64,000 nucleotides of DNA from NCBI GenBank assembly GCA_964234715.1, contig OZ174286.1. The stretch is one strand, 5' to 3'. Position numbers and translations under genes: made by a program. The notes under the pieces are model-generated. The model ran no database searches. It was not told where the DNA came from and saw only the letters and a list, made by a program, of their open reading frames with translations. The stretch is from Podarcis melisellensis. Taxonomy: Eukaryota. Positions 20,850 through 62,333 of this stretch are shown piece by piece; positions within the stretch are counted from its first letter, which is position 1, and each line of letters begins with the position of its first letter.

Positions 20850-22130
20850 GAAGCCTGGAAAGACTTTTACGCGCGAATGGACTCGCTCCTGCAGCACCTC
20901 TCCACTTTCGAAACATGCAACATCATTTAAACACTTTGAAAGGTTATCGAGATTCATTCCGAAACCAGATGCACAGAACCTCCCTGCTGTCCAAAAAGTC
21001 GCCGGAGCCTGGCAGGGCACTGCCACCTGAACCCGATGCAAACTTTATTCTAGCTAGACCCTTGCGCTGCTGGCACAGAAAGGGGGCGGGGAAAGAGCGA
21101 GGCTCCTTTGCCCCGGGGAAAAGCAGCAGCAGCAGCAGCAGCAGCGCTACGAACCGGCCCTACCACGCCAGGCTTGCAAAAGCAAAGCCGCTCGCCCTTG
21201 CAAGCCACAGCTCCTCACAAAAGCAATGCCAGCAGCTCCCCCTCTCCCAAGCGCAGCTCCAGCCCCGTGGCTAAAGTCGGCCAACTCCTCGGAGTGACTT
21301 TTCGCATGAGTTGGGTGGCTTGCAAGATCGCACCCCTCCGCTGTCCCCCCCCCCCCGCGGCACGCTCGACTGCAGAAGAGACTGGAAAGCAAGCAAGCAA
21401 ACAAACCAACAAAAGGGGGAGGGATGCTTTAAAGCCGAAACAGCGGCCGCGGCAAAAGCAGCCGTATGGGGACCCCGCCGACTGCGCGCATTGCCCGTAC
21501 AGCGCGTCTCCCCTCAAGGATGTGCGATTTGCAGGAGAAAAGTCCTGGGGAGCCGGGATTTTGGGCTTGAGCGCGAAGGCTGATGCACCTGATGGCAGGA
21601 GCAGCCCCCTCCGCCGGCTTCTCGGCTGCTTCGCCCAGCGCCTTGCTTACCCGTGCATACTAGTATGCCATGCAGAGGGATGGAGAGGTAGGAGCACACG
21701 CGACTACAATGGAGACGGCATGAGCACGGCCTTTACCTTGGCGAGGGGTGTGTGTGTGTGTTTGTATCTGTGTGCGCGCGCGCGCTTCTGCTGCCGGGCG
21801 CCTCGGCGATCGCCTCCTGTCAAAGCAGCGCTCGGCGCTTCTTCCCGACCCGGAGGAATAGCAGCGCCCGGTATCCCCGCGCCGCTGCCCGCGCCGGTCC
21901 ACGTGCCGCTCCGCCACGCCCACCGGCGCGCTCTCTCAGCTCCCGATTTGCCTCTCCCGCCGCCGCCGTGGTGCTTTCGGAGCTGCTGCCTTGCAAAGCT
22001 TGGGCAACGCATTTGCAGGCTGGCCCGCGCGACGCAGAGCGGCGTCTCTCTCTCTTTCGGCTTCTGGCCTGCCCACGTTGAAGAAGGAAACATGGGCTGG
22101 GCTGGGGCGGTGGAAAAGGGAAGGTAGGAG
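20850..22130 (-). promoter_or_regulatory. CpG-island promoter of an unidentified minus-strand gene
   Basis: Only long, non-repeat, CpG-dense stretch in the window; E-box CACGTG 21900-21905; Sp/KLF box CCACGCCC ~21914; minus-strand donors inside the island. Confidence 0.8.
21651..21900 (-). other. Candidate first exon (5' end approximate)
   Basis: Donor CGG|GTAAGC after 21651; alternative donor AAG|GTAAAG after 21737. Confidence 0.55.
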
Positions 22131-24550: not shown

Positions 24551-25336
24551 TGTCAGAGCCACCCGTCTGGTCCCAGCTCACAAGAGACCCAACTCCAATC
24601 CGGTTTATTTACAGAAAGTCTTTATTGAAGATCATGGTTGCGTTTACATTCCATCTTTGTGACTCTACGTCTGTAACGTTAGACCGCTGAAGTCCCCTCT
24701 GAATCCGTACCGCCTCGGCACCAATTTAAGAGGCTTGTGCTGGACCACCTCTTCCTCTCCTTCCTTTTCCGCAGGGTCTTTCTGCCCCCCTGGGTTCCCC
24801 CTCGCCGGGACTCGCCCGAGGCTGAATCCTCTGATGCCTCTGCCCCCCTCCTTCTCGCTTTGGGGCCGGGCTCCTCCCCAGGGCTCTCCTCACTTCCGCG
24901 CGCCTCTACATTTGAACTTGGCGCGCGTACGTTGCTTCTGACCTTTCTCTCGACCGCTACACTGCTCCCGGTGCTACTCTCCACCCCCTCCGGCTGAGCG
25001 TCCTGCTCCGATCTCCTTCCCCTGTCTCCTTCTTGCTCTGCTCCCTCTGACACACTGGTAACTCCACCCCCTTCACTCCGTTCCGGCTGAGAAGCCGGCT
25101 CCGGTGTCCAACTCCCACTGGGGCTTCTCCCTTCGCTCCCCTGCTCCTCACTGCTTCCCCCTTGGCCTCCCTTTGGTCTGACCAGGGGGGCTCCCTTTTG
25201 GGAGTCCTCTGACTCACTGGACAGACTCATGGACGACCTTTGGTCATCGTCATCCTCCTCCTCATCTCTCTGGGATTCTTCCCCCTCGCTCTCTGTCTCC
25301 TCCCCCATCTGCTCTTCTCTCCCTGAAACCCTGACA
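24551..25336 (-). mobile_element. Solo LTR (Gypsy-like), 786 bp, young
   Basis: TGTCAG...CTGACA termini; perfect 5-bp TSD ATTTT; AATAAA on the minus strand at 24604-24609 and 24621-24626; CpGs retained. Confidence 0.9.
24679..25308 (-). CDS. Putative LTR-internal ORF (209 aa from ATG): acidic/Ser-rich with a C-terminal basic cluster
   Basis: Open frame MGEETESEGEE...KTLRKRKERKRWSSTSLLNW... covering most of the LTR; translation unproven. Confidence 0.3.
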   Translation of the reverse strand: MGEETESEGEESQRDEEEDDDDQRSSMSLSSESEDSQKGAPLVRPKGGQGGSSEEQGSEGRSPSGSWTPEPASQPERSEGGGVTSVSEGAEQEGDRGRRSEQDAQPEGVESSTGSSVAVERKVRSNVRAPSSNVEARGSEESPGEEPGPKARRRGAEASEDSASGESRRGGTQGGRKTLRKRKERKRWSSTSLLNWCRGGTDSEGTSAV

Positions 25337-25467
25337 ATTTTGTATTTTAAAATAGTAAAGCAAAGCAAAAAAAAAGCACAGTAGGTGCAAGCATCGCCCT
25401 AGTTTTGACAGGTTTCCTAGTTTTGCAACTGTATTTGAACACCATAGTGCACAACTATATCTGGATA

Positions 25468-36190: not shown

Positions 36191-37885
36191 GACTAGGAAG
36201 CAGTCAGAATATTAACAATGTAGTTCTTTTATAAGCAAGCCTATACAGAAGTAAGCCACATGGGACTTGGGACTTACTCCCAAGTAACTCTATAGAATTG
36301 CAGCCTTAACTAGAACAAGAAATATTGGAGTTCTTATCTCAGGGCTCTCATTGTAAGTCAATTCACACAGTTCTTTTTTATGCATTGAGTGGTGGGCTGC
36401 TAGGCTATGGGGACTGCTGAGAATTCAGTGAAGCAGTGCTGGAAACCTTGTTAAACTACTGAACGTTGTACATTACACACCATACCAAATAAATTAAAAT
36501 CTGAAACTCTGAAAAATCTGAGTTTGGGTTACTAACTACACTTCCTGTTTAAGGAGTAATAATATTTAATATTCTGATTCGGTTCCCACATCACTTTGAA
36601 GGAATGTCTGCAAATGTCAGTAGGCATATCTGAGTTGAATCTCCAGAAAAGATCTGAAGAGCCACTGCATTTTATTTCCTGCACAGTCAAATCTGTAATG
36701 TGGTCATTTTGAAACAGTCTATTATTCCAGCTGCTTTCCTCTTTTATGGTTACTTTAAATTTATGGCCTCCATGATGTACTTCCCAATGGACTTAACATT
36801 GAGAATCAGCAGCTCTACAAATCTCCTGCCAACGGACTTTCATCTTCCCTGTTAATTTGTGTACTTGTGAAGAATGTGGCCATAAATCACAAAGAACACC
36901 TTAGCCAAAGCAAATGTAGCCCTATTTTCAGGCACACAGACACACACCCAGTGGCAAGTGGTGGCTAAGAGTTGCACACAGTGGTGCACTTAATTTTTTT
37001 ATTTGTCATCTCATGTCAGCTCATTCTCTTCGCGATCTTGCCACTTAGCCTGCATACAGGGCTATTTGTCAATATAATCTCTCAGATTTCCAAGAATATA
37101 TTTAATCAGCTGAAAACAAGAGCAAGTCATAAACTTCAATGAAACAGAATTTAGAAGAAGAGACAATGAATACTGCTTTGCTTTGGAGAATGCCATGTTG
37201 TTGCCCTGCAGTCTTATTCATGTGCATAATGTTTTGCTTCACAATTCTTCCAGGTATCTATCCAAATAATACATTGAAGCAGAGGGCTGTGCACTGAAGC
37301 ACAGAATGGGTGTTCAAGCTATGCATAATTAACAAATATTACTTTATCTAAGTTTCAGGTCTGATAATCTGAATATCAGATTCTACAAAATAACAAAAAC
37401 TGAGTGATTACAGAGTGAAGCAGTGAGGGGGCCCCTGTGGAATATCATGGTTATTGCCATTAAATCAATATTTTTTGTATGTGTTTGATATGATGGAAAC
37501 ATTACATAGGGAAGTGACTAGATCAGATAGATACGTAAAAATTTGCTCTGTGTGCTGGAAGAGTTAAATCAGAATTTATTTTATTGCCAGAGAATATCAC
37601 CTACCATAAGAGTAGGCAGACTTTAGGCTTGTGGGATCTACTTACCGGTATGTGTTGTTGTTGTTGTTTACTAAAACCATCAGATCCACCAGTCAGAGCC
37701 TACCCTGCTTCACACTTCACATTTGTATCCCGTATGAGAATTTATCTGACCACACGCACAGCCCAAGTCTTTCTGCAGAAAAATCGACTTCAGGCTTTCC
37801 CCAAGCTTTCTTCATTGTGGCAGTATAATTTAAGGGTGAGAGGAGAATCTTCCCCAACACAGTGCCCTTCAGCTGTTTTGGACTA

Positions 37886-38127
37886 CAGTGGCACCTTGTT
37901 TCTCAAACAGCTTAGTTGCCGAACAAATCGGCTCCTGAACGCTACAAACCCAGAAGTAAGTGTTCCGGTTTGCAAACATTTTTCAGAAGCTGAGCATCCA
38001 ATGTGGCTTCCATTTGAGTGCAGGAAGCTCTTGCAGCCAATCGGAAGCCACGCCTTGTTTTTTGAACAGTTTCATGAGTCGAACGGATTTCCAGAACGGA
38101 TTAAGTTCAAGAACCAAGGTACCACTG
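37886..38127. mobile_element. Tigger-like MITE
   Basis: TA-CAGTGGCACCTTG ... CAAGGTACCACTG-TA. Confidence 0.85.
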
Positions 38128-38820
38128 TACAACTTTCATCAGTCCCACCCAGCATGGACAACAGTCAAAATGTAGTTCAAAATATGTGTAGGACAAGAGG
38201 GAAGCCCGTTGCAACAGGCTTTAGATAACGTCTATTATGTTGAGCCACCTTAACTAACAAAGAGCATCAAGAGAACTGTCTCTTCAGCTAGCTCCATGTA
38301 AAAGCATGGCTTTAATAGTATTTACAAACCATGACTGTTCCTTCAGATGGTTTTAGATTCAGCTGTATGTCATGATTAAGGATGCAATGATACAAAATTT
38401 TCTTTGAAACCTAGGACTTGTAAGAAAAAGCAATTTATATGCGTTGTATATGCGATATAACGTTTTGCCACCAGATGACGATGTGGAGTCCCATTTTTTT
38501 CTCTACCTGTTTTCCCTGTTTAAATTTACAACACTTTAAACCAAAACACTTCTTTGATGCGTCTAGGTCCAGCCATAGAGAGCTTCTGCCGCCTCTTTGT
38601 CTTCATTGGATATGGGGTAATCGATATTGTTGGACTACAGTCCTAGCCAGTATGGCCAATGGTCAAGGTGATAGGAGTTGTAGTCTAGCAACATCTGAAG
38701 GGCATGTTGGCTACCTTTGAACAGTGTTCAGAAGCCATTGTGAAACAGGATGGGTCCAGAAAAATGAATTCCCTTGCTGTCATCAGGTGAGAGCTCACAG
38801 CATCTCTAGGGAAGATGCCT

Positions 38821-41873: not shown

Positions 41874-42228
41874 AGGTAAAGGTAAAGGGACCCCTGACCA
41901 TTAGATCCAGTTGTGACTGACTCTGGGGTTGCAACGCTCATCTTGCTTTATTGGCCGAGGGAGCTGGCGTACAGCTTCCGGGTCATGTGGCCAGCATGAC
42001 TAAGCCGTTTCTGGCGAACCAGAGCAGCGCACAGAAATGCTGTTTACCTTCCCTCCATAGCGGTACCTATTTATCTACTTGCACTTTTACGTGCTTTTGA
42101 ACTGCTAGGTTGGCAGGAGCAGGGACCGAGCAACGGGAGCTCACCCCGTCATCGGGATTCGAACCGCCGACCTTCTGATTGGCAAGTCCTAGGCTCTGTG
42201 GTTTAACCCCCAGCGCCACCCAGGTCGC
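41874..42228 (-). mobile_element. Sauria SINE, full length
   Basis: (AGGTAA)n tail; GGGATTCGAACC B-box; conserved body. Confidence 0.92.
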
Positions 42229-42335
42229 TCCATATCCACCTCCATGGGATGTTGACACATCCTCAGCTGAAGTTCTGGACAAGAACAGGCTCTGCATGCA
42301 AATCAGGGCCACTGTCTTTTGTCTACAACTTGTAT

Positions 42336-42590
42336 AAAGGTAAAGGGACCCCTGACAGTTAAGTCCAGTCGTGGACGATTCTGGGGTTGCAGCGTTCATC
42401 ACACTTTAAAGGCCAAGGGAGCAGGCGTTTGTCCACTTTCGCAGTTTTCCGGGTCATGTGGCCAGCATGACTAATTCGCTTCTGGCGAGCCAGAGTAGCA
42501 CACAGAAACGCCGTTTACCTTCCCGCCAGAGTGGTACCTATTTATCTACTTGCTCTTTGACGTCCTTTCGAACTGCTAGGTTGGCAGGAG
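42336..42590 (-). mobile_element. Sauria SINE, 5'-truncated
   Basis: AAAGGTAAAGGGACCCC tail and body; head absent. Confidence 0.9.
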
Positions 42591-42872
42591 TTAGTTCAGA
42601 GAAAAAAGGCAAGTAAAGGTTGACATGAGAGAATTTTGTAAGAAAAATTATGCATGGCGTGGAGAAAATGGATAGAGAAAAACTTCTCTCCCTTTCTCAG
42701 AACGTTGGAACTTGTCAACTTCCAGTGAAGCTGAACGTTGAAATATTCCGGAGATGTGAAAGGAAGTACAGTTGTACCTCACGTTACATACACTTCAGGT
42801 TACAGACTCCGCTGACCCAGAAATAGTACCTCGGATGAGAACAGGAATGCTTCAGGATGAGAACAGAAATCG

Positions 42873-44799
42873 GGGACTTCCGGGATAGCGCGATCCGGTA
42901 ATGGCGGATTCCCTCCGAGCTCCGGAGGGAATCGGCTCCGCAGAGGACGGGTCTTGCCGTGCCGGCGACACGGGGACCCTTAAAAACCGCAGGCGCTGAA
43001 GCCTGCGGACTTGGTGACTCGGTGGGCACCTTAAACGCCCTCCCCGACCCGCGAAGAGCCTTTTTAAAGGCTGCAGAGTGGACTGGGGTGCGGCGCGGTG
43101 CTGAGAGTCCATCGCTACCTCCGCGGAGCGAAGCCGCGAGCCATGGCCGGAGAGCGCTGTCTTCCTTCCTGAAATTTGGACTGAAACAAAGAACCCGTGA
43201 GTAAAATGAAAATTCGATATTAAAATTTTACCTTTGATTGGAGTACGACCGGGGGATGTGCTAAAAGGAAGTCCACACTCCCCCCCCCCCACAAAAAGAT
43301 TCAAGCAAGGAGAGGAGCACTGAGGTGGAAAGACTTTTGTGCTTAAAAAGATAACTTGCACGAATTGGATTAAAAAGTTACTGTGCTGGAGAGGAGAGAG
43401 GAATTTTAGAAGCTTTTATGTAATCCCCCCCCCCATTCTGAACCCGGGAGTGTCCTGCGTGTGAGCCTGAGGAAAAAGAGAAAGAAAGTTTGACAGCTGT
43501 CAAAAGAGCTGTCAAACGGACGATTAAAGGCTGGAACTGTGATATTTAGAAATTTATTTTTGGATTAAAGGTGACATATTGTATCTGAACTGATTGGAAA
43601 CAAAGTATTTTTGAACAACAAAGTAACGAATTGTTGGAAAAGGACTATTGGACTGGCAATCCCCCTGGAGGGAACAAAAGATACTGCAATGGCTGCAGAA
43701 GGAAAATTACTGGCAGAGATTGAAAGGATGTTCTTTCTCGTGGGAATTCTACAACAGCAGACTGCAGATATAAACAAACAACTTGTGACCTTGAATTTGA
43801 AATTGAGCAACTCTGCTGACGACATAAAGTTGGAAAAAAACCCGGCAGCCGGAACAGAAGAGACAGCTATGGAAATGGGGGGAAGAGAAGAAGAAGAAGG
43901 AGAGGATGTTCAGACGGAAAGCACCAACCAAAAGCCTGCAGCTTTAGGAAACAAGGGAATTGAAGAAGAGGACCAGTGGACCGTAAATCTGCAAAAGGAG
44001 AGAAGGACAAAGGAAGAAGCCCCTGGAATATCTGAAATACCGGAATATAAAAGAATAAACAAACATGATTGGGACTTCTTCCTCAAGTTTGAGGATGGGA
44101 GACTGGCAGACCCTTGGCAGCAATTGCTATTGACTGATTTGGTGGAAGGAAAGAACAAGCATGACTGGGACCCTTTTTTTAAGTTTGAGCATGGGAGACT
44201 GGCAGATCCTTGGCAGCAACTGCTACTGACTTTGGTGGAAGGAAAGAAGAGGGAGTTTGGGACACAACTCCTTCGAGAACTGAAGGCCAATAAGCAACAA
44301 AACAGACGGAGAGAGACTAACTGGGGCTTGAGAGCCTCGGATGTGAGAAATCCGGGCTGAAACAGTTCTTTTAGAATAGTGACTTGGGAAGTGACTTGGG
44401 CCAGGGAGGGAGGGGGAGAGTAGAATAGTAAAAATTTATGACTTATGATTTTTTAATTTGGATATGTTTTGTTTAATATAAAAAGGGAGGATTTCGTGGG
44501 AGAGAAGGCAGGTCGACCTTAGAGAAAGGAGCTAATGTGTAAAAATTGGACAATTAAATTTGAGCCTAACAAGAGACGTTAAATATTAAGAACAGAGGAT
44601 AACAATATAATAGAGAGAAGAGGAAATAACTTGCTGAATTAACTATTGAAACTGGAATGTGGGAAGGAGAGTTGTGGGGAAGTCAAGGAAAGAGGGTAAT
44701 GAAAATTATATATGTTTTATTTTGTGTTTTGTGTTTGTGTGTGTGTTTGTCTACAAAAAATGTGAAAACTCAATAAAAATTTATTAAAAAAAAAAAAAA
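42873..44799 (+). mobile_element. Apparently full-length single-ORF non-LTR retroposon (HAL1-like, L1-dependent)
   Basis: Perfect 14-bp TSD GAGAACAGAAATCG (42859-42872, 44800-44813); CpG-rich 5' end GGGACTTCCGG...AATGGCGG; AATAAA 44772-44777; A14 tail 44786-44799; no RT or endonuclease. Confidence 0.85.
43689..44360 (+). CDS. 223-aa protein of the retroposon: heptad-like N-terminus, acidic linker, duplicated 32-aa Trp-rich module, basic C-terminus
   Basis: ATG in strong Kozak context (GCAATGG); intact frame; repeat copies differ mostly at synonymous sites plus one 3-nt indel. Confidence 0.65.
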   Translation: MAAEGKLLAEIERMFFLVGILQQQTADINKQLVTLNLKLSNSADDIKLEKNPAAGTEETAMEMGGREEEEGEDVQTESTNQKPAALGNKGIEEEDQWTVNLQKERRTKEEAPGISEIPEYKRINKHDWDFFLKFEDGRLADPWQQLLLTDLVEGKNKHDWDPFFKFEHGRLADPWQQLLLTLVEGKKREFGTQLLRELKANKQQNRRRETNWGLRASDVRNPG

Positions 44800-45005
44800 G
44801 AGAACAGAAATCGTGCCGCTGCGGCGCAGCGGTAGCAGAAGGCCCCATTAGCTAAAGTGGTGCTTCAGGTTAAGAACAGTTTCAGGTTAAGAACGGACCT
44901 CCAGAATGAATTAAGTACGTAACCAGAGGTACCACTGTACTTCACTCAGGGCATTTTGAAACTATGGAACTTTCTCCCACTGGGGGCAGTAGTAACCACC
45001 AACTT

Positions 45006-45369
45006 AAAGGTAAAGGTAAAGGTACCCCTGCCCGTACAGGCCAGTCTTGACAGACTCTGGGGTTGTGCGCCCATCTCACTTAAGAGGCCAGGGGCCAGCG
45101 CTGTCCGGAGACACTTCCGGGTCACGTGGCCAGCGTGACATCGCTGCTCTGGCGAGCCAGAGCCGCACATGGAAACGCCGTTTACCTTCCCGCTGGTAAG
45201 CGGTCCCTATTTATCTACTTGCACCCGGAGGTGCTTTCGAACTGCTAGGTTGGCAGGCGCTGGGACCGAGCAGCGGGAGCGCACCCCGCCGCGGGGATTC
45301 GAACCACCGACCTTTCGATCGGCAAGTCCTAGGCGCTGAGGCTTTAACCCACAGCGCCACCTGCGTCCC
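45006..45369 (-). mobile_element. Sauria SINE, young full-length copy of a distinct subfamily
   Basis: AAAGGTAAAGGTAAAGGTACCCC tail; many intact CpGs; head ...GCGCCACCTGCGTCCC. Confidence 0.93.
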
Positions 45370-59756: not shown

Positions 59757-59991
59757 CAGTGGTACCTCGGGTTACATATGCTTCAGGTTACATACGCTTC
59801 AGACTCTGCGAACCCAGAAATAGTACCTCAGGTTAAGAACTTTGCTTCAGCATGAGAACAGAAATTGTGCTCCGGTGGTGCAGCAGCAGCAGGAGGCCCC
59901 ATTAGCTAAAGTGGTGCTTCAGGTTAAGAACAGTTTCAGGTTAAGTACGGACCTGTGGAACGAATTAAGTACTTAACCTGAGGTACCACTG
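59757..59991. mobile_element. Tigger-like MITE, intact
   Basis: TA-CAGTGGTACCTC ... GAGGTACCACTG-TA. Confidence 0.93.
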
Positions 59992-61483: not shown

Positions 61484-62333
61484 TTATTTACTTATTTTGT
61501 GAATTTTTTTGTTTTGTTTTACAAATACAAAGTACAAATAAACACAAACTAATAATACATAACTATATATAGAGATTATCCAAATCTTGGGACTTCCCCC
61601 CGCCCTTGGAGTTTAATTATAAACATTGGCAACTGCATATTCACCCGTACTCCTATTTTTATATCAAACCATATTGTCCATAATAATTTTTACACTACAA
61701 GTGAATCAAAATCCTGCTATTGTTTCCATCCAATTACAGTGGTCTCCTAAGTAGCTTACATATTTTTCCCATTTCCCATTCCCAGTTAAAGTTTTTATCC
61801 TCTTGGTTTCTGAGTTTTCCAGTCAGCTTTGCCAACTCGGCATAGTCTATCAGCTTGGTTTGTCATTCTTCTCTGGCAGGAACTTTGTCTTCTTTCCAAC
61901 TCTGGACTAATAACATCCAAGTGGCTACTGTTCCATACACGAGAAGTATTTTCTGCTCCTTTGGTATGTTGGCACCTATAATTCCTATAAAAAAGCTTCT
62001 GGGTTCTTAATAAAAGTTACTTTAAGCATTTTTTCCCCATTTCATTATATATCATCTCCCAAAAAGCTTTTATTACCTAACAAGTCCACCACATATAATA
62101 AAAGGTACCTTCTTTTTCTTTACATTTCCAGCAGATATTTGAACTTGTCTTATACATTTTTGCTAATTTAGTAGGAGTCAAATACCACCAGTACATCGTT
62201 TTTCATATAATTTTCTTTCAATGTACAACATGCTGTAAATTTCAAATCTGATTTCCATAGCCTTTCCCATTCTGTCATCAGAATATTATGTCCCAAATCC
62301 TTTGCCCAGTGTATCATAACCGACTTGACCTGT
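61484..62333 (-). mobile_element. L1 LINE 3' fragment
   Basis: Minus strand [37 protein letters not shown] zinc-knuckle region; 18-bp TSD CAGAACCAACTAATTCTA / CAGAACCGACTAATTCTA. Confidence 0.9.

What the first reader, a model, noticed from the sequence alone, without database searches (positions are those of the whole stretch)
42873..44799. Intact ORF-only retroposon (HAL1-like L1 parasite) with an unrecognised protein
Seen: a 1927-bp insert with a perfect 14-bp TSD. The uninterrupted host MITE at 59757-59991 has the target only once (ATGAGAACAGAAATTGTG), which fixes the boundaries. The insert has a CpG-rich 5' end with ETS-like GACTTCCGG and YY1-like AATGGCGG motifs, an ~815-nt 5' UTR and one 223-aa ORF. 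Its 3' end (GGGGAAGTC, then TG-rich, then AATAAA and poly-A) resembles the true L1 tail at ~61484-61600. There is no RT or endonuclease, and I see no canonical L1 ORF1 RRM motif. Known: mammalian HAL1 elements encode only ORF1 and borrow L1 ORF2. Inference: this is a young squamate analogue with a divergent or novel cargo protein that still mobilises as a full-length unit.
Basis: partly seen in the sequence, partly recalled or inferred. Interest (0 to 1): 0.78.

Follow-up and report, generated by a model that had tools for sequence, protein, structure and literature searches.

The report
Protein-coding L1-dependent lizard retroposon copy
This is one complete copy of a many-copy, 1.9-kb lizard jumping element that has no copying enzyme of its own, probably borrows L1's, and carries a small conserved protein that matches no known family, L1's ORF1 protein included.

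Summary
Window 42873-44799 is a 1927-bp insert ending in AATAAA and 14 A's. It is flanked by a perfect 14-bp target duplication and sits inside a MITE whose intact copy has the target once.

It is not single-copy. Contigs of public runs from at least two organisms cover the whole 1.9 kb with many variants 5-15% diverged.

The 223-aa ORF has about 20 full-length relatives (170-215 aa, 24-60% identity). All but one are unannotated. The exception is a Podarcis lilfordi hypothetical protein. All share an N-terminal heptad helix and an invariant C-terminal ASD-x-R-x-PG followed by a stop.

No Pfam, PDB or profile search links the protein to L1 ORF1p or to any longer protein. Structure models are helical or disordered, with no RRM.

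The last ~105 nt align colinearly with an L1 tail in the same window, weakly but above chance.

Best reading: a non-autonomous retroposon moved by L1, HAL1-like in lifestyle but not shown to be HAL1 by descent.

This scan already found the same family on other DNA of this genome (s1-509518, s1-498183, s1-505002, s1-489287).

The parts
42859..42872 (.). 5' target-site duplication GAGAACAGAAATCG
   Evidence: Exact 14-nt direct repeat with 44800-44813 (family D15). The target is present once in the intact MITE.
42873..44799 (+). Whole retroposon copy, 1927 bp
   Evidence: Bounded by the duplication and the poly-A. The whole length is covered by many diverged contigs in runs of organisms A and B, and thinly in C.
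42873..43172 (+). CpG-rich, strongly structured 5' head with ACTTCCGG (42876-83) and AATGGCGG (42900-07); presumed internal promoter and 5' leader
   Evidence: G+C 0.60-0.68 and CpG o/e about 1. RNA fold -164 kcal/mol, z = -5.9 against shuffles. No Rfam family and no tRNA. Summed contig depth is 2-3x (X1) to over 10x (X4, X5) that of the body, so the head is probably shared with other repeats.
42957..42973 (+). Hairpin in the head with a compensatory change among copies
   Evidence: In the predicted fold, 42960 pairs with 42970. Family variants T>C at 42960 and A>G at 42970 have similar shares in each run. Both were read in organism C's only contig at those two places, apparently the same one (12.5 of 12.5 depth, one contig each; record 26 spans both) (table 3).
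43173..43688 (+). AT-richer remainder of the 816-nt 5' UTR
   Evidence: Composition shift at about 43173. No long ORF.
43653..43688 (+). In-frame 12-codon N-terminal extension that is coding in several relatives; here CTG replaces their ATG
   Evidence: Relatives P0001, P0002, P0004, P0006 and P0007 begin M-x-(I/T)-P-L-x-G-T, 12 residues upstream. The window reads L-A-I-P-L-E-G-T in frame.
43689..44360 (+). ORF of 223 aa plus stop: N-terminal heptad helix, acidic disordered linker, aromatic D-W-D module, basic C-terminal helix, invariant end ASDVRNPG
   Evidence: relatives. (models: helices only, pLDDT 44-46). (no Pfam).
44050..44145 (+). Tandem module 1 (96 nt, 32 aa)
   Evidence: Direct repeat D4, 83% identity. 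Absent from all database relatives. Apparently present in organism B: a 742-nt contig is near-colinear over 43717-44452, 731 of its letters for 736 of the window's, though 15 gap letters could offset (record 21).
44146..44238 (+). Tandem module 2 (93 nt, in-frame 3-nt shorter)
   Evidence: From K-H-D-W-D to L-L-L-T the two modules differ at 9 codons, 6 of them synonymous. The last 13 codons differ only synonymously.
44361..44785 (+). 3' UTR
44676..44785 (+). L1-tail-like 3' end (GGGGAAGTC, then a T/G-rich run, then an A-rich end)
   Evidence: Colinear alignment with the L1 tail 61490-61625 (-): score 19 against shuffles 11.1 +/- 2.0, reached by 1 of 300. The shared 9-mer occurs only at these two places in the window.
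44772..44777 (+). AATAAA polyadenylation signal
44786..44799 (+). Poly-A tail, 14 pure A
44800..44813 (.). 3' target-site duplication
42763..44943 (.). Host MITE interrupted by the insert (terminal inverted repeats 42763-42791 and 44915-44943)
   Evidence: Inverted repeat I1. 87% identity to the intact copy at 59757-59991. Many contigs join 42870-72 to about 44824-41, which are MITE copies without the insert (table 5).
61490..62320 (-). Decayed L1 3' fragment (ORF2 C-terminal Cys-rich region plus 3' UTR), used as the L1 tail for comparison
   Evidence: The minus-strand translation shows W-Y-L-T-P-x-K-L and C-W-K-C...W-W-T-C with frameshifts. I read this as the L1 ORF2p C-terminus from general knowledge. 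Pfam has no hit for these short pieces.

Best explanation
The insert is a full-length copy of a lacertid-lizard family of non-autonomous, polyadenylated non-LTR retroposons, about 1.9 kb long.

Inferred life cycle:
1. The element is transcribed from its own CpG-rich, structured 5' head, which travels with the RNA. It is polyadenylated at its own AATAAA.
2. Its single ORF is translated into a ~200-aa protein that is mostly helical or disordered and has an N-terminal coiled-coil-type heptad helix.
3. The RNA is then copied into a staggered genomic nick by an L1 ORF2 protein supplied in trans. This leaves a poly-A tail and a 14-bp target duplication.
4. The L1-like last ~105 nt and the poly-A would be the handle for the L1 enzyme.
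5. The encoded protein would act on its own RNA, in the way ORF1p or HeT-A Gag do, to raise its chance of being picked up.

Shown here: the insertion anatomy, that the family is multicopy, and that the ORF is conserved.
Inferred: the promoter, the use of L1 ORF2p, and the protein's role.
For: Insertion hallmarks: perfect 14-bp TSD, AATAAA, 14 A's, and a target present once in the intact MITE.

No RT or endonuclease ORF.

Multicopy: the whole body is covered by many short contigs 5-15% different from this copy. Up to 35 contigs carry an alternative letter at one site. This is seen in runs of organisms A and B and thinly in C. Earlier scan notes report other full-length 1.86-1.96-kb copies with TSDs on other chromosomes of this genome (not re-checked by me).

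ORF kept:
- About 20 distinct full-length relatives in at least 10 deep lineages, 24-60% identical, all 170-215 aa.
- The N-terminal helix and the C-terminal ASD-x-R-x-PG-stop are invariant.
- Their contigs are 0.9-1.9 kb, never longer than the unit.
- Nucleotide-level constraint: the two tandem modules differ at 6 synonymous against 3 non-synonymous codons, plus an in-frame indel.

Head: structured (z = -5.9), with one compensatory T-A to C-G pair among copies.

Tail: aligns colinearly with an L1 tail in the window, 1 of 300 shuffles as good.

No annotated parent gene: the only named relative is a 129-aa frameshifted 'hypothetical protein' of Podarcis lilfordi.
Against: - The target GGAT/GAGAAC is not the TT/AAAA preferred by mammalian L1 endonuclease.
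- Tail similarity to L1 is weak and rests on one L1 copy.
- Depth figures from contigs are not copy numbers, and no contig spanning the whole unit was listed.
- Among the 25 best-supported family variants in the ORF, 10 are synonymous and 15 are not, which is close to neutral. So most copies simply decay, and selection is inferred only for the propagating lineages.
- No RNA run was identified, so expression is unshown.
Shared ends and dN/dS across lineages were therefore not tested.
Confidence: 0.8

Rival explanations
1. It is a true half-L1 by descent. The ORF would be a much shortened, fast-evolving L1 ORF1 that keeps the N-terminal and coiled-coil part, has lost the RRM and C-terminal domain, and sits between an L1 5' UTR and an L1 3' UTR.
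For: The N-terminal heptad helix (residues about 7-39, hydrophobic at 3-4 spacing) recalls the ORF1p coiled coil. The basic N-R-R-R...L-R-A stretch near the end loosely recalls the R-R-N-N-L-R-I start of the ORF1p RRM; this comes from my own memory and is not a test. The tail is L1-like. An earlier follow-up in this scan read the family this way (s1-505002).
Against: No ORF1p signal in Pfam for any of 14 members at E<=1. None in the PDB profile search at E<=10. None in a profile search of 1.84 billion representatives, which returned no credible relative longer than 215 aa. The models show no beta structure. Language-model neighbours are LTR-type Gag/PNMA rather than Transposase_22, and score below 0.9. 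The head could not be compared with an L1 5' UTR.
Confidence: 0.3
2. It is a processed retrocopy of a cellular mRNA. The ~200-aa proteins would be orthologues of an unannotated, fast-evolving host gene, and the other copies ordinary processed pseudogenes.
For: A CpG-island-like 5' end with ETS and YY1 motifs, a long 5' UTR, AATAAA, poly-A and TSD are exactly what a retrocopy of a housekeeping-type mRNA looks like. Relatives' contigs of 0.9-1.9 kb would also fit transcripts.
Against: The whole length is covered by many different diverged contigs in several runs and organisms. At least two lineages only 41% identical occur within one genus, if the window is Podarcis as the scan notes say (P0022 against the window). 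No annotated gene in any squamate appears among 15 billion proteins. The tail resembles an L1 tail.
Confidence: 0.07
3. It is a one-off internal deletion of a normal two-ORF L1, or a chance ORF in a non-coding retroposon.
For: Internally deleted L1s exist in this genome according to a first-reader note (s1-512606).
Against: The same ~200-aa ORF, with the same start and the same stop, recurs in about 20 diverged relatives. The family is multicopy over its whole length. The tandem modules show coding-type substitutions.
Confidence: 0.03

Closest known systems
HAL1 (half-L1) of mammals
   Same: A non-autonomous, poly-A, L1-dependent element about 2 kb long that keeps one ORF and no ORF2. It arises and persists as a family of its own (definition from PMC5753468).
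   Different: The HAL1 ORF is recognisably L1 ORF1p, and this one is not. The host is a lizard, not a mammal. L1 origin of the 5' part was not shown here.
HeT-A of Drosophila (a Gag-only non-LTR element that relies on another element's RT); from general knowledge
   Same: An RT-less non-LTR retroposon that is maintained long-term with its own conserved structural-type protein.
   Different: HeT-A Gag has zinc knuckles and targets telomeres. This protein has no known domain, and the copies are dispersed with TSDs.
SVA and other composite L1-mobilised retroposons; processed retrogenes
   Same: Pol II-type transcript, AATAAA, poly-A, 14-bp TSD, mobilised in trans. The head seems to be a module shared with other repeats.
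   Different: SVA is non-coding. Retrogenes are not self-propagating families with deep lineages.
L1 ORF1p (Pfam Transposase_22 with trimerisation and dsRBD-like domains)
   Same: N-terminal heptad helix, basic C-terminal part, encoded as the first ORF of a poly-A retroposon.
   Different: No RRM or CTD and no sequence or profile match. About 200 aa, mostly predicted disordered.

Membership tests
L1-mobilised non-autonomous poly-A retroposon | Ends in a poly-A tail preceded by a polyadenylation signal | tested here: met
   AATAAA at 44772-77 and 14 A's at 44786-99.
L1-mobilised non-autonomous poly-A retroposon | Flanked by a target-site duplication of about 7-20 bp, with the empty site known | tested here: met
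   14/14 TSD. The intact MITE has the target once.
L1-mobilised non-autonomous poly-A retroposon | No reverse transcriptase or endonuclease of its own | tested here: met
   On the sense strand the only long ORF is the 223-aa one; the other ORFs listed are mechanical, mostly antisense. The 223-aa protein has no Pfam domain; the other ORFs were not scanned.
L1-mobilised non-autonomous poly-A retroposon | Many dispersed copies | tested here: met
   Many diverged contigs over the whole length in four runs. Other copies are noted by the scan.
L1-mobilised non-autonomous poly-A retroposon | Insertion at a TT/AAAA-like L1 endonuclease site | tested here: not met
   The site is GGAT/GAGAAC. The preference of lizard L1 endonuclease is not known to me.
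L1-mobilised non-autonomous poly-A retroposon | 3' end related to that of the partner LINE | tested here: inconclusive
   Colinear ~105-nt alignment with one L1 tail, 1 of 300 shuffles as good, but no blastn hit.
HAL1 (half-L1) | The ORF is L1 ORF1p (RRM and CTD, Pfam Transposase_22) | tested here: not met
   No such Pfam hit in 14 members. No ORF1p chain in the PDB profile search. No strands in the models.
HAL1 (half-L1) | 5' UTR derived from an L1 5' UTR | not testable with these tools
   There is no L1 5' end in the window and no lizard genome or repeat library on hand. Only the excess depth of the head hints at a shared module.
Processed pseudogene or retrogene | An intron-containing parent gene exists and the copy number is low | tested here: not met
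   No annotated relative except one frameshifted P. lilfordi hypothetical protein. The element is multicopy. The parent-gene search itself was not possible at DNA level.
SINE with a small-RNA-derived head | Head derived from tRNA, 7SL, 5S or snRNA | tested here: not met
   No Rfam match at E<=1 and no tRNA.
2A-like stop-carry-on peptide D(V/I)ExNPG|P | Invariant N-P-G followed by P, with the D-(V/I)-E-x spacing | tested here: not met
   The family end is A-S-D-(V/L/E)-(R/I)-(N/S/D)-P-G followed by a stop. The N is not conserved, the spacing is one residue short, and there is no P.

The most novel reading that the evidence does not exclude
The ORF encodes a so-far undescribed kind of retroposon protein, not descended from L1 ORF1p. 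It would be an independently invented or captured adaptor: a coiled-coil head, a disordered acidic linker and an invariant C-terminal ASD-x-R-x-PG peptide. This adaptor would let an RT-less element compete for L1 ORF2p. The family would have kept the protein through at least ten deep lineages in lizards and would still be active in wall lizards.
Probability: 0.4. Interest if true: 0.75.

Novelty: new variant of a known kind. Interest (0 to 1): 0.6.

Why it matters
RT-less LINE parasites that keep a protein of their own are rare. HAL1 and HeT-A are the textbook cases, and both use a recognisable Gag or ORF1 protein.

A long-lived, still mobile lizard family whose protein has no detectable kinship to ORF1p would raise two questions. 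What is the minimum a protein must do to get an RNA onto L1's reverse transcriptase? Can that function be reinvented?

The invariant C-terminal peptide and the structured 5' head are concrete handles for experiments.

It also matters for annotation. Genome pipelines mask or miss this ORF family. In 15 billion proteins only one annotated fragment turned up.

Tried and rejected
So there was no dN/dS between lineages and no check that relatives share the head, tail and ends.
- Second copy in the window: none.
- Earlier findings by sequence: blank.
- Metagenome scan with the family profile: 22 pattern matches, none a relative.
- Pfam on the window protein and on 14 members: only scattered sub-threshold noise. 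The Parathyroid hit at E 0.005 is below its cut-off.
- PDB profile search: only the neuroguidin N-terminus, residues 1-41 on 1-41, E 1.2. This is chance level and I keep it as a curiosity.
- ESM Atlas: unnamed hits at 0.80-0.81. Named hits are LTR-type Gag and PNMA at 0.85-0.89 with only 100-124 shared features, below the level that counts.
- Structure: two AlphaFold runs gave pLDDT 45.7 and 43.8. That is too poor for a fold search, so none was run.
- Complex prediction on three copies of residues 1-60: no verdict (score 0.24, mark 0.32). This is not evidence either way.
- 2A-peptide reading of the N-P-G end: rejected. The N varies, the spacing is off, and a stop follows rather than Pro.
- Pol III or SINE-type head: rejected.
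- Pfam on the short L1 ORF2 C-terminal pieces: no model matches them.
- P0021, a 1336-aa FN3-repeat protein from the profile search: a spurious repeat match.
- Literature: searches for HAL1 or half-L1 in lizards, and for Podarcis non-autonomous LINE-1 elements, found no description of this family. Bao and Jurka 2010 is not held.
Full report
**1. What is in the sequence**

The stretch 42873-44799 is a 1927-bp insert.
- It is preceded and followed by the same 14 bases, GAGAACAGAAATCG (42859-42872 and 44800-44813).
- It ends in AATAAA (44772-44777) and 14 pure A's (44786-44799).
- The DNA around it is a MITE with terminal inverted repeats at 42763-42791 and 44915-44943.
- When the two flanks are joined with one copy of the duplication, they align at 87% with the uninterrupted MITE at 59757-59991, which holds the target once.
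- Many contigs of public runs join 42870-72 directly to about 44824-41. These are other MITE copies without the insert (table 5).

**2. Anatomy of the insert**

The first ~300 nt have G+C 0.60-0.68 and CpG observed/expected about 1. Both drop sharply at about 43173.
- This head carries ACTTCCGG at 42876-83 and AATGGCGG at 42900-07.
- It folds far better than shuffles: -164 kcal/mol, z = -5.9, 0 of 100 shuffles as good.
- It matches no Rfam family and no tRNA.

The ATG of the only long sense ORF is at 43689 and the stop at 44358-60, giving 223 aa.
- Twelve in-frame codons upstream (43653-43688) are coding in several relatives. Those relatives begin there with ATG, and this copy has CTG.
- Inside the ORF, a 96-nt module (44050-44145) is repeated in tandem as 93 nt (44146-44238) at 83% identity.

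A 425-nt 3' UTR follows. No RT or endonuclease is encoded.

**3. It is a family, not a one-off**

There is no second copy in the window. However, contigs of four public runs laid on 42373-45299 cover the whole 1.9 kb with many short pieces that differ from this copy by 5-15%.
- Up to 35 different contigs carry an alternative letter at a single site.
- This is seen in organisms A and B, and thinly in C.
- The runs are small (1.1-1.5 billion letters). The tool warns that depth is not copy number, so I claim only 'many copies'.
- The flanking MITE is roughly a thousand times deeper.
- At nine or more ORF positions nearly all contigs differ from the window. An example is 43755, where the window has Q and the family and all relatives have E. 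So this copy has drifted somewhat from the propagating sequence.
- The head (42863-43156) is 2-3 times (X1) to more than 10 times (X4, X5) deeper than the body. This suggests that the head is a module shared with other, more abundant repeats.
- Two family variants, T>C at 42960 and A>G at 42970, sit opposite each other in a predicted hairpin (42957-61 with 42969-73). They have similar shares in each run, and both were read in organism C's only contig at those places, apparently the same one. This is one compensatory pair and a hint of selection on the RNA fold.

The scan's earlier notes report further complete copies of 1.86-1.96 kb with TSDs on other chromosomes of this genome. One copy is reported absent from another individual. 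The notes also report a 1.1-kb non-coding family with a structured head. I did not re-check these notes. They agree.

**4. The protein**

The word search found 7 full-length relatives. A profile search of 1.84 billion representatives and a second word search with the profile raised this to about 20 distinct sequences in at least ten deep lineages. They are 170-215 aa long and 24-60% identical to one another.

They share the following:
- An N-terminal helix, M-A-A-E-G-K-L-x-A-E-I-E-R...L-V-G-x-L-Q-E. In the window protein I11, M14, V18, L21, T25, I28, L32, L35 and L39 fall at 3-4 spacing, as in a coiled coil.
- A variable acidic linker.
- An aromatic D-W-D-F region.
- A basic stretch.
- An invariant end, A-S-D-(V/L/E)-(R/I)-(N/S/D)-P-G, always followed by the stop.

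No credible relative is longer than 215 aa. P0021, an FN3-repeat protein, is a spurious match.

All relatives come from Logan assemblies on contigs of 0.9-1.9 kb. The exception is P0022, a 129-aa frameshifted 'hypothetical protein' of Podarcis lilfordi, CAI5779343.1. P0022 groups with P0003 and P0018, not with the window protein, to which it is 41% identical. If the window is Podarcis, as the scan's notes say, then very different lineages coexist within one genus. That is how TE lineages behave, not orthologues of one gene.

Tests for a known family or fold gave nothing solid:
- Pfam is blank for all 14 members tested.
- The PDB profile search gives only a chance-level match to the neuroguidin N-terminus.
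- Two AlphaFold models are poor (pLDDT 46 and 44) and show only helices, at residues 3-42 and 174-212 in the window protein, with no strands.
- Language-model neighbours among named clusters are LTR-type Gag and PNMA at 0.85-0.89, below the level that counts.

**5. Is the ORF under selection?**

Direct nucleotide evidence in this window is small but points one way.
- From K-H-D-W-D to L-L-L-T the two tandem modules differ at nine codons, six of them synonymous.
- The last 13 codons differ only synonymously.
- The length difference between the modules is an in-frame triplet.
- The module pair is apparently also present in organism B: a 742-nt contig lies near-colinear over 43717-44452 (731 of its letters for 736 of the window's, with 15 gap letters) (record 21). 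It is therefore a feature of this subfamily.

By contrast, the 25 best-supported differences between this copy and other genomic copies split 10 synonymous to 15 non-synonymous, with no codon-position bias. That is what decaying dead copies give.

Retention of the same start, stop and end motifs over lineages down to 24% identity is the main argument that the propagating copies need the protein.

**6. Link to L1**

At 61490-62320 on the minus strand lies a decayed L1 3' fragment.
- Its translation shows W-Y-L-T-P-x-K-L and C-W-K-C...W-W-T-C. I recognise these from general knowledge as the C-terminal Cys-rich region of L1 ORF2p.
- Pfam has no model that matches these short pieces.
- The last ~105 nt of the insert align colinearly with the last ~105 nt of that L1. 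The alignment starts at the shared GGGGAAGTC, which occurs nowhere else in the window.
- The alignment scores 19 against 11.1 +/- 2.0 for dinucleotide shuffles, and 1 of 300 shuffles reaches it.
- blastn sees nothing.

This is weak, above-chance support for an L1-type tail. It rests on one L1 copy.

The insertion site GGAT/GAGAAC is not TT/AAAA.

**7. Mechanism proposed**

Shown:
- A retroposed, polyadenylated unit with a TSD.
- A multicopy family.
- A conserved ORF.

Inferred:
- Transcription starts at the element's first bases and is driven by the CpG-rich head, which is downstream of the start and so is carried along.
- The ~200-aa protein is translated and acts on its own RNA.
- L1 ORF2p supplied in trans nicks the target and primes on the poly-A and L1-like tail.

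I put 0.8 on this overall reading. Whether the protein is a drastically reduced ORF1p (0.3) or something unrelated (0.4 for the novel case) is open. All homology tests run here were negative. A coiled-coil-only remnant of a fast-evolving ORF1p could, however, escape them.

**8. Comparison with what is known**

The element works like HAL1, which is defined as a non-autonomous L1 derivative that encodes only ORF1p and has arisen several times in mammals (PMC5753468). It also works like HeT-A (general knowledge). I do not file it as HAL1, because the defining ORF1p homology was tested and not met.

It is not a SINE, not a plain processed pseudogene, and its N-P-G end is not a 2A peptide.

I found no paper describing it. 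Repbase and Dfam could not be consulted, so an unclassified library entry may exist.

**9. Limits**

The relatives' DNA, ends and dN/dS could not be examined.
- No RNA run was identified, so expression is unknown.
- Complex prediction gave no verdict.
- Run organisms are coded. The lacertid assignment rests on P0022 and on the scan's notes.

**10. Verdict**

The same family was already found by this scan elsewhere in the genome.

It is a new variant of a known kind: a protein-coding, RT-less parasite of L1 with an orphan protein. Interest 0.6.

Noticed in passing
window 42763-44943 (host) and 59757-59991: A ~235-bp MITE with ~29-bp terminal inverted repeats. It is extremely abundant: summed contig depth is about a thousand times that of the retroposon in all four runs. 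The host copy also has a local 22-bp duplication, 42833-48 and 42855-70.
   Followed up: partly
window 42000-42590 and 45011-45361: Another dispersed repeat flanks the MITE on both sides. 42059-42210 matches 45199-45350 at 84%, and 42000-42119 matches 42471-42590 at 88%. Depth in the runs is very high, so it is probably a SINE-like family.
   Followed up: no
window 61490-62320 (-): A decayed L1 3' fragment with the ORF2 C-terminal Cys-rich motif, several frameshifts and a degenerate A-rich end.
   Followed up: partly
window 42873-43172: The element's CpG-rich head is 2-3 to more than 10 times deeper in contigs than its body, most of all in organism B. The head may be a module shared with other retroposons. 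One candidate is the 1.1-kb non-coding family with a structured head noted elsewhere in this genome (s1-494029, s1-494030).
   Followed up: partly
window 43689-43811 (protein residues 1-41): The family's N-terminus aligns residue 1-41 on 1-41 with human neuroguidin (7mq8 chain NC) at E 1.2. This is not significant, but the register from Met1 is curious.
   Followed up: partly
window 44334-44360 and relatives' C-termini: Every intact full-length relative ends in Pro-Gly directly before the stop, within an invariant A-S-D-x-R-x-P-G; the only exceptions are the frameshifted P0022 and the truncated P0035. The role of this terminal peptide is unexplained. It could be a docking motif or a C-terminal glycine degron.
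   Followed up: no
window 21108-22127 (+), 24679-25368 (-), 37584-38228 (+): Three ORFs of 214-339 aa elsewhere in the window, all starting with TTG, have no Pfam match at E<=0.01. I did not examine them further.
   Followed up: no
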